64,000 bases of DNA from Dimorphilus gyrociliatus (GCA_904063045.1 CAJFCJ010000019.1:310001-374000), one strand, 5' to 3'; positions 33,589 to 40,450 are shown, counted from the stretch's first letter. A program made the numbers and translations. Notes: generated by a model not told the origin, from the sequence alone.

Positions 33589-36397
33589 ATGCTATTTGTT
33601 CAAGTAACTTTTCACATTTTTCTTCTTAGTTTTTACATTATCAGGTTAGTATGAAGAAACTGATCAGGCCTATTGTCAATTTGTGAATAGTTGTTCACAA
33701 TAAAATTTATTATATTGTTAAAAATGGAAGAATATTCTAATAGTATCGTTTTTCTTTATTTAGGGCACATCCAACTGAAACCAAGGACTGTAATTTGTCG
33801 CATTGGATAGACAAAAATAAATCGACACTAAATACGCCCAGACATGCATCGTTATACAGAGAATTACAATCTTTATTAAAACAATCTGTAACAATAGATT
33901 GCTCAAGTTTACAAAAATATACAGAGATAATTGAAATACCAGAATACCATAATATTTTTGATGATTTATCATCTATAGCTGATGATTTGGAAAATGTTGA
34001 CATAAATTCCAAAACAAAGAAACAAAACTACAAGGCAAAGCGAAAGTTGTCTTGCTCTGTAAAAGATTGGTGCTTTTATATATTTAATATTCAATCATTT
34101 CATAAACAGTTATTTAGTGATAAAAACAGTACAACTATAAAGAGCAATTCTACAAAGAAAATTGTTATTAGTTTTAACGAGATTTGCTCAAGAAAATTGA
34201 ACAGTTCATCATCATTGCTATGTTTCTACGTTCATTTAAAACTTCAATTGCCCACTTGCAAATTCGATGATTTATCTAATCTACCGCCTATTGCTAATTT
34301 ATCCTCCTCCGCTGATCAGTCAGACAAGAAATTGTTGAAAATTGATGAAGAATACGATCCTACAGAGAGTTTAGACGAGGAGACTGATAATATAGTGTCT
34401 GCTAAAAATACTACTGTTGAGGACATAGAGAAAAAACAAGATAATGAAACTGAAAAATCGAGAAACAAAGATAATGTAGTAACTAATTCGCAACCATTAG
34501 ACAAGGAAAAAGAAAAAGTGCCACTTTTAACTGCTAATCAAGAAGAACAAACTGATGCAAAGAAGAAGGATGAAAGCAATCATTCAGTTCAAGAAAATTT
34601 AAATTTTAGTAAATTAAAAGAAATAGAAATTCAATTGTTAAAATTGGAAAATAGATTTTTATTATCAAATGTAGAAAAAAGGAATGATTCCTTATCATTA
34701 GTTCAAGTTGAAAATCATATTCTTCGTTTAGAAAACTTTCTCTTATCAATGAATAATACGTTAGCTCTCGTACAAGCTGAAAACAATAGATTAAAAGAGA
34801 AACAAAATGATTTTGATAGAACGATAACCCAAGTAAAAATGGAAACTCGTAAATTATCTATACCGGCTCTACCTGATTCTCATTCGCGATTACCCGAACA
34901 GGTTGTTAGACAGGAAAAACTAGTGATCAATCTTAAAAAGGAAGTAGATAGACAAAAATTGAAAGTTTCTTCATTAGAAGCGAAAAATTCAGTGTTAATA
35001 AAAGCTATGAAGAAGCAAACTAATGCTATTTCAAAGTTATTAAAAAAATTTGATCAATTGACAGAGAAAACCAATTATTTAGATGAACATGTAACAAAAC
35101 TCTCCTCTGATACTACACCTCCTCAGGTTCCTGATGGTAAAGAGGATGATAAGATAAATACTAAGGAAGACTCTAAAGATTCTGATAATATAAAGCCTAG
35201 TGCCGAAATTCAATCGGGAAAGACGTCGAAGGAGAAAGAGCAAATTGCGCAGCATCAAGAACCAATGGCTAATTCTCCTAGTAATAATGTCAAGGAAGAG
35301 AATCGTAGTGAAGGTAATGAAAAAAATAAAGAAACGTCCAGTGTTAAATCTCAACAGCCAGTTGTTCAAGAAAAGGAAAACGAAGAGGGAATCATGGATA
35401 AAAAGAATATCACATCTGATGAAGTACTTGCAAAAGCCAATGGGGATTCGAACAAAGCAAAAAGGGATATTGAAAACATTAATCAAGAACCCGTCAAACC
35501 GTCAACAGACTCTAATATAGATAATGAAAAAACTAGTCGATCAAAACAATCTGAGCAGAAGAGAAAAGATGAAAAGGTTCAAAGAAATGATAAAATCCAA
35601 GATACAATTTTATATCGCAGTAATTCTGGTGCAGACAAAGGTAAAATCCAATCTCTCTTTCATTATTCTATATTTTAAATATAATAGATAAGGAAAATGG
35701 GGACTAATACAGTATTAATAATGTCTTTGTAGATTGCTGGGATTATTATAAGAAAGGAAGAAGACGAGACACAGCATTGAATATACAACTATCGGCGGAT
35801 AATTCTGTAATATCCGTCAGCTGTGATATGACGAATGGAGGATGGACTATTATACAAAAGCGACACGAAGGAAGTACTAACTTTTTCCGTGATTGGTCAG
35901 AGTATAAAAAGGGATTTGGACAACAGTTCAGTGACCACTGGATTGGATTGGATAATATTCATAAATTAACAAATCAAGATAGATATTCTTTAAGAATTGA
36001 TATGATGAATTGGGAAAGGGAAACGGCAACGGTTGAATATGAATATTTTAGTGTTGATAACGAAGCAAATGGGTATAAATTAAATATCTCTGGTTTCAGC
36101 GGTTCTGAAGCTGGCGATAGTTTATCAAAACATAATGGTTGGAAATTTTCAACTAAAGACGTCGATAATGATGGCGCAAAGAAAGAACTAGGAGGAAGTT
36201 GCGCAAAACGATTTAATGGTGCCTGGTGGTATCACAAATGCTACAGTTCTAATTTGAATGGTCTCTACTATAGAGGAGGAAAAGTTGACGATGGTGCTTT
36301 CGATGGAGTTAGTTGGAAAAGTTGGACTGGTAGTAAAAAATCGCTTAAGCAAGTTTCAATGAAAATTAGGCCCAGAAGAACAAAATTAGATGATTAG
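33589..36397 (+). CDS. Secreted fibrinogen-related protein: signal peptide, coiled coil, long hydrophilic stalk, C-terminal FBG domain (angiopoietin-like architecture)
   Basis: Signal exon MLFVQVTFHIFLLSFYIIR joined in phase at 33764; FBG motifs CDM..GGWTIIQKR, FFRDWSEYKKGFG, HWIGLDNIH, AWWYHKCYSSNLNG. Confidence 0.9.
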
Positions 36398-36557
36398 AAT
36401 AATTTAATATTGATTAAAGAGATACTTTTAACAGATTATTTATTTATTTAATTTATATTTTTCAATAAAAAAATATCCCTAAATCATCATAATAAAAGAT
36501 ATCTAAGTATAAATTTACTATAAAAAGCACTTGACGATCTTCTTCATTTCCATCCAA

Positions 36558-39026
36558 TCAGTTTTCCTTATTACTCTTAGAAAATTTAATTCTATTTGAA
36601 AACTTTATCTTTAAATCTGTAGTTTGTTTGTTTGTCTTGATTAATGAATTCTATTTTAATTAATTAAGAAAAAAAATCATACTTTTAGTTAGAGTTGACT
36701 TCTTTTGAATTTTTGTAGTAAGTTTCCTCGCTTCGTAATCATCTATATTCGGTATGGTTTTCTCTTGTAATTCGATTTTATATCCTAAATCCTTAATCCT
36801 CGTCTTACCTTTTAATATTTATACGATTAATTATTATATTTAGTATTGTATAATAACTCAACAATTTTAAAAAAGTCATTTAGATACATAACCTTCTTCA
36901 GTCCACGGAGGAGGAATGACATCATCTCTTTCAAAGAGATAACGCCAAACATAAAACCCAGCTAATCCTCTTTCTTTCCAATATTTTCGAATCTTGTATA
37001 TACCATCGTATCTAATTCCAAAAGATGGGGCGTATATAGATTGTTTGGAGGATTTATAAGATCTAAAAACTATTGGAAAGGTAATGTAATATATTCATAG
37101 TGTTTATTTGTTTTTGAAACTTAAACCTCGGACTGGATTGCCATACTTCCAATTGTCCTGCGCATCGCCTCCGTTTTCGCTTAGAAGTGCATAACAATTT
37201 CTAGCTAGTGCCAAATTGCAACCGGAAAATTCCTGATCTTTCGACTGTTGAGCGCATCGCTTGTTTCCGGATAAGTCTCTGCCACCACTACCAGTAAATA
37301 TGAATGTATCACCGAAATCTTGATCGTCCTCGTAACCTCCAGATAATACCACTGAAAAAGCACCTCTTTTCGGTTGACCATGAATCCCTGCAACAAGTGG
37401 TCTGTGGCCTCCAGCTTGAGATATTTGTTTTCGATATTCCCAGGACATACCAACATCAACTCCTGGTATTGGACCAAACTGACCTTTCTCTTCCATAGTC
37501 TTCGGTATAATAGAACGTTTTAATTTTTTAACTATTTGAACATCTGAATCAGATTGTACATCAATATCAAATTCATCAAGTGTGTCAGTAGTTTCTTCTT
37601 CATCATCATCATCATCATCATCGTCATCAATACACATGGGGCAATATCTAATATACCAATTTTTGTCAGTAGGTATACCACTTAAAGGAGGATCCAGGCA
37701 AGTAAGATGAATATTCTTACAACATCGAGGACAAAAGACTGCAGCTTTCTCGTTACTATACTTTCCGCATCTAAAACAAAGACAATATGGGCATTTTCCA
37801 CTTAGCTGATCTTTACATTCAAGACATTTGGGCGTTGCTTCATAAAAATTCACCATATCATCAATTGAGTTAATATTGCATTGATCACCTAACTCTTCGT
37901 GATGATAGAATGTAGTATTGGCCGCTAATAATTTATTTTGCTGTAGAATAGCATTTTTATAGTGCAATATGTCAACCTCTACTATATCATTTGTCATTTG
38001 GGTAACCCTGCACAGAAAGAATATATCTTCTGCTCCTCCTTTGTAAAAATCAGACGACTTAACAATAACCTGATCTCCTACTTTCATGTGGGAAACTTTA
38101 ATTTTTCTTCGTGGATGAGGCTTTAAGCGCTTGAAGCAAACCACAGCAGTTTGGCCTTGAACACAAGACTGACAATTTCCGCCAAGTCCATTTAAATAGT
38201 TCTGAAAGCATGCTTCACACCGATATTTCACTGTGTACATTGATGTCAAATTAGTATTAATAGTTTCAAAGTTTAATGTCATATTAGCAAGACTTTTCTT
38301 CTTTTCACAGGCAATTATAATAGCGGTTCGATAGCCTCCAATTGACTCATCAAAAGACACAACTAGATCACCAATCTTTAAGGTTCAATTTTCATAATTA
38401 CTTATATCATAAAATTCGTTATAAGTTAACAAATTACCTTATAAGTACTTTTTGATTCGTTCATAGTATCAACTAGCGGTCTCATTGCCGATTCAACAGA
38501 TCTAGCGTATGCTATACTACCTCCATCTGGAATATTATAGTATTCAATCGTTTTATCGTCTTCCAGCTGGAAAAAAAGACAAAAGTATTAATAAATAAAT
38601 CATGTTTTGAGTAGTTTCTAAATGAAATAAACAACAAAAGATTTAATCTAGTTAACTAAATTCTTAACAATCAGTTACAAAAAAAAAGAAATACAAAGGG
38701 AAAGTTTTTAAAGATATCATTCTTGTAAGAACATAAAAAATCATTAATAAAGTGTTTTTTGATATGTTTTAAATAGTTTTAATTTGAATTATAAGCTATA
38801 ATTAGATCTGTTTAATATTGTTACGTTAAAAATGTTACATTTACAAAGCATCTTTAGCTTCATATTGAAAATCCTTTACCTCTTGTCCAAAGTATAAAAA
38901 AGTGCAAGGTATTTCAATTAATCCCATCCTATGTGCCATAACCTTTATAGATCTAATTTCCTTGAAGGTTTCCACATTGATATGAAACCATTTTTGAGTT
39001 CCGTAGTAGATTATTTTCAATTTCAT
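36558..39026 (-). CDS. UHRF1: UHRF1-like protein (UBL - degenerate tandem Tudor - PHD - SRA), no RING found; about 6 exons
   Basis: UBL FLYFGQE|[12 protein letters not shown]; [18 protein letters not shown]; [62 protein letters not shown]. The last exon is the least certain. Confidence 0.9.

Positions 39027-39365: not shown

Positions 39366-40450
<1,085 letters not shown>

What the first reader, a model, noticed from the sequence alone, without database searches (positions are those of the whole stretch)
36398..36900. UHRF1 appears to lack the C-terminal RING E3 domain
After the SRA end (PPPWTEEG|KTRIKDLGY) the model runs through two short Lys-rich exons and stops at about 36558. The convergent FBG gene stops at 36397, and I see no C3HC4 pattern in the AT-rich remainder. 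The RING ubiquitylates H3 and PAF15 to recruit DNMT1, so a RING-less UHRF1 should not support canonical maintenance methylation. Together with the Tudor and PHD changes, this suggests a dismantled or repurposed methylation-maintenance system.
Basis: partly seen in the sequence, partly recalled or inferred. Interest (0 to 1): 0.85.

Follow-up and report, generated by a model that had tools for sequence, protein, structure and literature searches.

The report
UHRF1 gene without its RING
The tiny marine worm Dimorphilus gyrociliatus expresses a UHRF1 gene whose ubiquitin-ligase (RING) end is truly missing, as it is in a distant relative; this fits the published lack of DNA methylation in this worm and adds only a modest detail to that story.

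Summary
The window is Dimorphilus gyrociliatus; the gene is annotated as DgyrCDS11338. Transcript contigs confirm all five introns of a six-exon minus-strand gene (39026-36558). The last two exons are short and Lys-rich, the stop is TGA at 36560-36558, and the 3'UTR abuts the convergent fibrinogen gene, which stops at 36397.

The protein has 628 aa: UBL-like, Tudor-like, PHD and SRA domains, then a 60-aa tail with no Cys or His. Three searches found no RING anywhere in the 64 kb: a C3HC4 pattern, tblastn, and an HMM built from 78 UHRF1 RING tails.

An unidentified relative (46% identical, synonymous sites saturated) has the same gene, the same neighbour, the same final intron and the same LKIKF-type end. 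The RING loss is therefore old, and the gene stays under purifying selection (SRA 73% identical).

Published work already reports negligible 5mC, no DNMT3, a CXXC-less DNMT1 and a "divergent" UHRF1 in this species. The text I could read does not mention the RING loss.

The gene most likely encodes a non-catalytic SRA-based DNA/chromatin reader that cannot carry out ubiquitin-dependent DNMT1 recruitment by itself.

Still open: I could not search the rest of the genome for a second copy. Interest is modest.

The parts
38880..39026 (-). Exon 1, start codon at 39026; first half of the UBL-like domain
   Evidence: The transcript contig reaches 39033 and shows the joint 38880/38566. Identical to the start of DgyrCDS11338. 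AF2 pLDDT is 85-92 for residues 1-70.
38438..38566 (-). Exon 2; second half of the UBL-like domain and a linker
   Evidence: Joints 38566/38880 and 38375/38438. Weak Pfam ubiquitin match, E 3.4e-3, below the cut-off.
37127..38375 (-). Exon 3: Tudor-like region with a Cx2Cx12Cx2C insert (38219-38163), pre-PHD and PHD zinc fingers (about 37826-37632), a poly-Asp run (37628-37593), and most of the SRA domain
   Evidence: Pfam SRA 5.7e-30 and PHD 6.9e-5. Matches human and mouse UHRF1 structures at E 3.5e-54, with the NKR finger and the GGYEDD / TGSGGRD motifs conserved.
36893..37069 (-). Exon 4: C-terminal part of the SRA domain, ending ...PPPWTEE(G)
   Evidence: Joints 37069/37127 and 36808/36893. 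Pfam SRA 6.1e-9. The reading frame was fixed by using the acceptor at 37070/37069.
36683..36808 (-). Exon 5: post-SRA helix and basic linker ([16 protein letters not shown]...[10 protein letters not shown]). The public annotation lacks it
   Evidence: Joints on both sides in a transcript contig. Aligns with the KKRK-rich linker of full-length UHRF1s. The homologous exon in the relative is L001 2477-2617.
36558..36616 (-). Exon 6: last 19 codons ([19 protein letters not shown]) and the stop TGA at 36560-36558. The protein ends where other UHRF1s begin the pre-RING helix
   Evidence: Joint 36616/36683. The LKIKF motif and the stop position are conserved in the relative. Alignment to full-length homologues.
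36439..36557 (-). 3'UTR with overlapping AATAAA/ATTAAA signals at 36452-36439. It lies tail to tail with the 3' end of the fibrinogen gene
   Evidence: The transcript contig covers 36557-36476, up to a repeat that the tool skipped. Poly(A) signals are listed.
35777..36397 (+). Last coding exon of the convergent fibrinogen-domain gene. It bounds the space left for any further UHRF1 exon
   Evidence: ORF. Pfam Fibrinogen_C 9.2e-62. 75% identical to the gene in the same position in the relative.

Best explanation
This is the Dimorphilus gyrociliatus orthologue of UHRF1. It lost its C-terminal pre-RING helix and RING finger by truncation in an ancestor shared with at least one other, deeply diverged species, presumably a dinophilid. 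It has since been kept as an expressed, selectively constrained 628-aa protein.

Shown: the transcript ends without a RING. No RING-coding sequence exists within 36 kb downstream or 25 kb upstream. The same stop, the same final intron and the same neighbouring gene are found in the relative. The SRA domain keeps the residues used for base flipping (thumb Val, NKR finger, GGYEDD, TGSGG), and the UBL-like, Tudor-like, PHD and SRA modules are predicted to fold.

Inferred: without a RING the protein cannot itself recruit an E2 to mono-ubiquitylate H3K14/18/23 or PAF15. It therefore cannot drive the ubiquitin-dependent docking of the DNMT1 RFTS domain that defines canonical maintenance methylation. 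It most likely acts as a non-catalytic reader or scaffold that binds flipped or modified bases through the SRA, with the Lys-rich tail acting as the remnant of the polybasic linker (nuclear targeting or DNA contact). Its likely roles are replication- or repair-linked and independent of bulk 5mC, matching its published co-expression with DNMT1 in early embryos of an animal with negligible 5mC.
For: Organism and gene: 100% match to DgyrCDS11338.
Gene model: five GT..AG joints in transcript contigs at 99% identity or more; 628-aa ORF.
No RING; the tail has 0 Cys and 0 His; the alignment stops just before the W..L pre-RING helix of full-length UHRF1s.
Conservation: the relative's locus L001 has the same exon 1 and exon 2 lengths, the same tail, a convergent Fibrinogen_C gene and no RING; the neighbouring genes are 75% identical.
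Identity by domain: SRA 0.73, PHD 0.40, tail 0.38, Tudor-like 0.37, UBL-like 0.33.
Selection: dN 0.49, dS about 2.4 (saturated), ratio about 0.2.
Fold: mean pLDDT 77 with four confident domains.
SRA: E 4e-46 in Pfam and close alignment to solved UHRF1 SRA structures.
That RING E3 activity is needed for DNMT1 stimulation is established knowledge, as summarised in 10.1101/2023.01.30.526367.
Against: No biochemical data exist for this protein, so its DNA binding, its lack of E3 activity and its partners are all inferred.
I could not search the rest of the genome for a RING-bearing paralogue or a split-off RING gene.
The transcript evidence comes from assembled contigs of a single run, so rare isoforms would be missed.
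5mC has been measured only in adults, so an embryo-restricted, RING-independent maintenance role is not excluded.
The relative's species is unknown, so the age of the loss is only bounded by saturated synonymous divergence.
Confidence: 0.8

Rival explanations
1. The RING-less protein still supports low-level or stage-restricted maintenance methylation in early embryos. It would recruit or activate DNMT1 directly, through SRA or UBL contacts with the retained RFD, without ubiquitin signalling. This would resemble Cryptococcus Uhrf1, which lacks a RING yet binds hemimethylated DNA.
For: The SRA base-flipping motifs are intact. DNMT1 keeps its catalytic motifs and RFD and is co-expressed with UHRF1 early, and only adults were profiled (PMC11292947). 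Cryptococcus is the precedent (10.1101/149385).
Against: Genomic CpG o/e is about 0.9 (paper) and 0.97 in this window, which argues against germline methylation over evolutionary time. DNMT3 is absent. In mammals, RING mutants fail to maintain methylation (established knowledge).
Confidence: 0.15
2. The E3 function is supplied in trans. Either a second, intact UHRF paralogue or a split-off RING gene exists elsewhere in the D. gyrociliatus genome, so the pathway is not RING-less.
For: No whole-genome search was possible with these tools. The protein search admitted only candidates of 229-728 aa.
Against: Only one D. gyrociliatus protein appeared among the 120 best UHRF1-like hits. The published toolkit survey names duplications (TET, Capitella DNMT1) but none for UHRF1. 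Notes from this scan record no other UHRF1 or SRA gene in the genome, which is weak evidence. The relative shows the same truncation.
Confidence: 0.06
3. The gene is a decaying relic of a lost methylation system. It would be a transcribed pseudogene in the making with no selected function.
For: The RING is lost. The Pfam scores for UBL, TTD and PHD all fall below their cut-offs. The species lacks 5mC.
Against: The 628-codon and 632-codon ORFs are intact in two species with saturated synonymous divergence, dN/dS is about 0.2 and the SRA is 73% identical. All zinc ligands of the PHD are invariant. The domains are predicted to fold. The gene is spliced and expressed.
Confidence: 0.04
4. Assembly or annotation artefact: the true 3' exons carrying the RING are missing from the assembly or are spliced in from far away.
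For: The public model (572 aa) is indeed wrong at its 3' end: it reads into intron 4 and stops at ...TEEGYVSK.
Against: The transcript contig continues through two further exons into a 3'UTR with poly(A) signals. No RING is found in the 64 kb. Contigs assembled separately from four other sequencing runs of another species show the same end.
Confidence: 0.02

Closest known systems
Canonical animal UHRF1/UHRF2 (UBL-TTD-PHD-SRA-RING E3 ligases)
   Same: Orthologous by best hits and by colinear alignment. The domain order UBL, tandem-Tudor region, pre-PHD/PHD and SRA is the same. The SRA is highly similar (E 3.5e-54 to solved UHRF1 structures). The basic post-SRA linker is retained.
   Different: It lacks the last ~100 residues: the pre-RING helix, the C3HC4 RING and the FPGY end. 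78 of the 120 listed homologues carry these; the rest outside this lineage look like partial or isoform models. Pfam scores for the UBL, TTD and PHD fall below their cut-offs. There is a lineage-specific four-Cys insert in the Tudor region.
Cryptococcus neoformans Uhrf1 (CNAG_00677) and other RING-less SRA homologues flagged across eukaryotes
   Same: A UHRF1-like protein with an SRA but no RING. The Cryptococcus protein still binds hemimethylated DNA selectively (10.1101/149385). RING-less UHRF1 homologues are a recognised category in a 180-species survey (10.1101/2023.01.30.526367).
   Different: The fungal protein also lacks the Tudor reader and works with Dnmt5 in a genome that has 5mC. 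The annelid protein keeps the UBL, Tudor-like and PHD modules and sits in a genome with negligible 5mC. The losses are independent.
Tribolium castaneum and Microplitis demolitor: DNMT1 and UHRF1 retained without detectable 5mC
   Same: DNMT3 is lost, DNMT1 and UHRF1 are kept, and CpG methylation is undetectable. DNMT1 is essential in Tribolium, which implies methylation-independent roles.
   Different: The Tribolium madens homologue in my hit list (P0100) still has a full C3HC4 RING. The annelid gene has lost it.

Membership tests
UHRF1/UHRF2 E3 ubiquitin ligases | C-terminal C3HC4 RING finger (E3 module) | tested here: not met
   No RING in the transcript-defined CDS, in the 60-aa tail (0 Cys, 0 His) or anywhere in the six frames of the 64 kb. 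It is also absent from the relative's locus.
UHRF1/UHRF2 E3 ubiquitin ligases | SRA (SET and RING associated) base-flipping domain | tested here: met
   Pfam SAD_SRA 4.2e-46 over residues 392-557. The NKR finger, GGYEDD and TGSGGRD align with human and mouse structures. One of the two aromatic residues that stack on the flipped base is Phe instead of Tyr.
UHRF1/UHRF2 E3 ubiquitin ligases | PHD finger with preceding zinc finger | tested here: met
   The Pfam PHD score is 22.6 bits against a cut-off of 24. However, all Cys/His ligands (C276...C340) are invariant in a 33-sequence alignment, and the region has pLDDT 79-89. H3-binding residues were not assessed.
UHRF1/UHRF2 E3 ubiquitin ligases | Tandem Tudor domain | tested here: inconclusive
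   Pfam TTD E 5.2e-3, 17.1 bits against a cut-off of 29.1. The AF2 model shows beta-rich modules with pLDDT up to 97, interrupted by a low-confidence insert. No fold search was run and the aromatic cage was not assessed.
UHRF1/UHRF2 E3 ubiquitin ligases | N-terminal ubiquitin-like domain | tested here: inconclusive
   Pfam ubiquitin E 3.4e-3, 17.6 bits against a cut-off of 25.4. AF2 predicts a beta-grasp-like pattern of strands and a helix with pLDDT 85-92.
UHRF1/UHRF2 E3 ubiquitin ligases | Orthology by descent (best hits, colinearity) | tested here: met
   All named hits are UHRF1/UHRF2, covering 56-100% of the query. Colinear alignment up to the truncation point.
UHRF1/UHRF2 E3 ubiquitin ligases | H3/PAF15 ubiquitylation that recruits DNMT1 | not testable with these tools
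   This needs an in vitro ubiquitylation assay. It is predicted to be absent because the RING is missing.
RING-less UHRF1-like SRA proteins (e.g. Cryptococcus Uhrf1) | SRA domain present and RING absent in a UHRF1 homologue | tested here: met
   The category is described in the papers read.
RING-less UHRF1-like SRA proteins (e.g. Cryptococcus Uhrf1) | Selective binding of hemimethylated DNA | not testable with these tools
   This needs EMSA with the recombinant protein. Only conservation of the pocket residues was seen.

The most novel reading that the evidence does not exclude
A UHRF1 with no ligase module but an intact 5mC-type base-flipping SRA has been kept under purifying selection, alongside a CXXC-less yet catalytically intact DNMT1, in a lineage whose genome shows no sign of 5mC. 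This would mean the UHRF1-DNMT1 pair has an ancestral, ubiquitin-independent and methylation-independent job in animals, for example at replication forks or DNA lesions. Alternatively, a RING-independent maintenance pathway operates only in embryos.
Probability: 0.35. Interest if true: 0.55.

Novelty: new member of a known kind. Interest (0 to 1): 0.35.

Why it matters
UHRF1's RING is considered indispensable for copying CpG methylation. A natural, long-conserved RING-less animal orthologue pinpoints one missing link in the already published methylation-free state of Dimorphilus. It also offers a clean system for asking what the SRA, PHD, Tudor and UBL parts of UHRF1, and DNMT1, do when neither ubiquitin signalling nor 5mC is in play. 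The practical gain is small: a corrected gene model (628 aa against the annotated 572 aa) and evidence that the loss is ancient and not a quirk of one assembly. The broad conclusion, a modified toolkit with no 5mC, is already in the literature.

Tried and rejected
1. My first splice choice for exon 4 (acceptor at 37062) broke the reading frame. The acceptor at 37069 restored the SRA sequence and was later confirmed by a transcript joint.
2. Reading through after exon 5 (616 aa) and two alternative acceptors for the last exon were considered. The transcript and the relative support only the 36616 acceptor.
3. C3HC4 and C3H2C3 patterns, tblastn and a purpose-built HMM were each run over the whole window and over the relative's contigs. 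Only noise came back.
4. I tried to identify the relative's species by searching papers for its run accessions. The hits were unrelated.
5. A phrase search for 'RING-less' or 'lacks the RING' together with UHRF1 gave nothing useful.
6. The supplement of PMC11292947 holds only the legend of Fig. S4c, not the drawing. I could not confirm whether the RING loss is depicted there.
7. Notes of this scan were searched for a second UHRF1, SRA or DNMT gene. None was found, which is weak evidence.
8. I ran no further search on a second copy.
9. DNMT1 RFTS residues were not examined because no DNMT1 sequence was available by reference. The paper states that the RFD is retained.

Full report
**Identity of the window.** The long exon of the minus-strand gene matches the NCBI protein DgyrCDS11338 of Dimorphilus gyrociliatus at 100%. 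This is a miniature annelid with a compact, AT-rich genome. The window has 32.5% G+C and a CpG observed/expected ratio of 0.97.

**Gene model.**
- I built the model from the sequence.
- I then tested it against assembled transcript contigs of one public run that match the window at 99% identity or better.
- The contigs skip exactly five segments with CT..AC ends, which read as GT..AG on the minus strand.
- The resulting exons are 39026-38880, 38566-38438, 38375-37127, 37069-36893, 36808-36683 and 36616-36558.
- The stop codon is TGA at 36560-36558.
- The contig continues as 3'UTR to 36476, where the tool skipped a simple repeat.
- AATAAA/ATTAAA signals lie at 36452-36439.
- The public annotation (572 aa) reads into intron 4 and ends ...TEEGYVSK. 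It misses the last two exons; the correct product has 628 aa.

**The observation.**
- The tail after the SRA is 60 residues long, with 17 Lys/Arg and no Cys or His, so it cannot form a zinc finger.
- No C3HC4 or C3H2C3 pattern occurs in any frame of the 64-kb window.
- tblastn with the last 140 residues of 11 RING-bearing homologues finds only the gene's own PHD finger.
- An HMM built from the pre-RING helix, RING and C-terminus of 78 homologues scores at most 7.5 bits (E 0.8, wrong strand) on 3,782 stop-to-stop pieces. The RING-bearing sequences score 99-153 bits, though they were part of the training set.
- About 160 bp separate the two stop codons, and the two 3'UTRs lie tail to tail. There is no room for a further exon, and none lies beyond the fibrinogen gene within the window.

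**Where the truncation lies.** I aligned the protein with full-length UHRF1s. It is colinear through the SRA, the helix that follows it (KTRIKDLGY against K.RIKKLGL), the basic KKRK-type linker and the segment L...IK.D..NKK. It stops where the other proteins continue with W..L, the pre-RING helix and the RING. About 100 C-terminal residues are missing.

**A second species.**
- The only close homologue in the protein collection (P0002, 46% identical over exon 3) comes from genomic contigs assembled from four sequencing runs.
- The longest contig, L001 at 9.9 kb, carries a seven-exon gene for a 632-aa protein.
- Exons 1 and 2 have the same lengths as in D. gyrociliatus (147 and 129 nt).
- The post-SRA exon is the same, and there is a final intron at the same place.
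- The end is homologous (...DRLKIKFIRKRYSYTKPDKET* against ...[19 protein letters not shown]).
- A convergent Fibrinogen_C gene follows about 220 bp after the stop codon.
- That neighbour is 75% identical to the one in the window, so the loci are orthologous.
- The RING HMM finds nothing in these contigs.
- Identity by domain is SRA 0.73, PHD 0.40, tail 0.38, Tudor-like 0.37, UBL-like 0.33 and acidic linker 0.20.
- Synonymous sites are saturated (dS about 2.4, or undefined by region), dN is 0.49 and the rough ratio is 0.2.
- The RING was therefore lost before these lineages split, long ago, and the remainder has stayed under purifying selection.
- The species of L001 could not be identified.

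**State of the remaining domains.**
- Pfam recognises the SRA strongly (4.2e-46).
- It recognises the PHD, ubiquitin and TTD families only below their cut-offs.
- All zinc ligands of the pre-PHD and PHD fingers are invariant in a 33-sequence alignment.
- An AlphaFold2 model made with that alignment has mean pLDDT 77. It shows confident modules for residues 1-72 (UBL-like), about 93-255 (Tudor-like, with a low-confidence insert), 275-340 (PHD) and 390-570 (SRA).
- Against solved UHRF1 SRA structures, several elements are conserved: the thumb (HRPxVAGIHG), [19 protein letters not shown] with the NKR finger, and the C-terminal RYDGIYK. One of the two aromatic residues that stack on the flipped base is Phe instead of Tyr.

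**Literature.**
- Guynes et al. 2024 (PMC11292947) report for this species 0.16% CpG methylation in adults, below the non-conversion rate.
- They also report a genomic CpG o/e of 0.9 and no DNMT3.
- They describe a DNMT1 that lacks the DMAP and CXXC domains but keeps its catalytic motifs and the replication-foci domain.
- UHRF1 is 'present', with expression that mirrors DNMT1 in early embryogenesis. They compare the case with Tribolium.
- Only the Capitella UHRF1 is said to have a human-like domain composition.
- The drawing for D. gyrociliatus (Fig. S4c) is not readable here, and the text does not mention the RING.
- RING-less UHRF1-like proteins are known elsewhere. Cryptococcus Uhrf1 lacks both Tudor and RING yet binds hemimethylated DNA (10.1101/149385).
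- A 180-species survey marks such homologues as a category (10.1101/2023.01.30.526367).
- Among the 120 best hits here, 78 carry a C3HC4 RING. The others outside this lineage are fragments or isoform models cut within or before the RING. A true gene-level loss therefore looks unusual among animals. The Tribolium madens homologue keeps its RING.

**Interpretation.**
- Established knowledge: the RING of UHRF1 mono-ubiquitylates H3 and PAF15, and the DNMT1 RFTS domain reads that mark. RING mutants do not maintain methylation.
- This protein therefore cannot by itself run the canonical pathway, which agrees with the published methylome.
- Because the gene is expressed, intact, folded and conserved in two species, it is not a relic.
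- The best-supported reading is a non-catalytic reader or scaffold built around the SRA, working either with DNMT1 or independently of it.
- The binding target and the biological role are inferred, not shown.
- A RING-independent maintenance role confined to embryos is the main functional alternative. The near-equilibrium CpG content argues against it.
- A paralogue or a trans-acting RING elsewhere in the genome could not be excluded with the tools at hand. The published toolkit survey and the single D. gyrociliatus hit make it unlikely.

**Verdict.** The finding is a real animal example of a known kind, a RING-less UHRF1 homologue. It sits in a species whose methylation-free state and divergent toolkit are already published, so the interest is modest.

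Noticed in passing
window 36558-36892 (-): The public gene model DgyrCDS11338 (572 aa) ends inside intron 4 (...TEEGYVSK*). It omits two transcript-supported terminal exons. The correct protein has 628 aa.
   Followed up: yes
window 38219-38163 (-); L001 about 1027-1083: A Cx2Cx12Cx2C motif is inserted in the Tudor-like region. Its spacing is identical in the relative, so it is a selected lineage-specific zinc-knuckle-like insert. With only four ligands it is not a RING substitute.
   Followed up: partly
window 37628-37593 (-): The poly-Asp/Glu run after the PHD finger is specific to D. gyrociliatus. The relative has an unrelated, partly basic linker there, and this is the least conserved part of the protein (20% identity).
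   Followed up: partly
L001 2254-2314: The relative has an extra 61-nt intron inside the SRA coding region (after ...FDGLYK) that D. gyrociliatus lacks. This is either intron loss in the compact genome or intron gain in the relative.
   Followed up: no
window 36398-36557: The UHRF1-like gene and the fibrinogen-domain gene converge, with only about 160 bp between their stop codons. Poly(A) signals for both strands lie inside that stretch, so their 3'UTRs probably overlap.
   Followed up: partly
window 39370-40447 (-): A proteasome alpha-subunit gene ([25 protein letters not shown]...) with several short introns lies directly upstream on the same strand. It ends about 340 bp before the UHRF1-like start codon. 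It looks ordinary.
   Followed up: no
whole window; L001-L004: CpG observed/expected is 0.97 in the window, which indicates no depletion. It is 0.65-0.81 in the relative's short contigs. The sample is too small to say whether the relative has more methylation.
   Followed up: no
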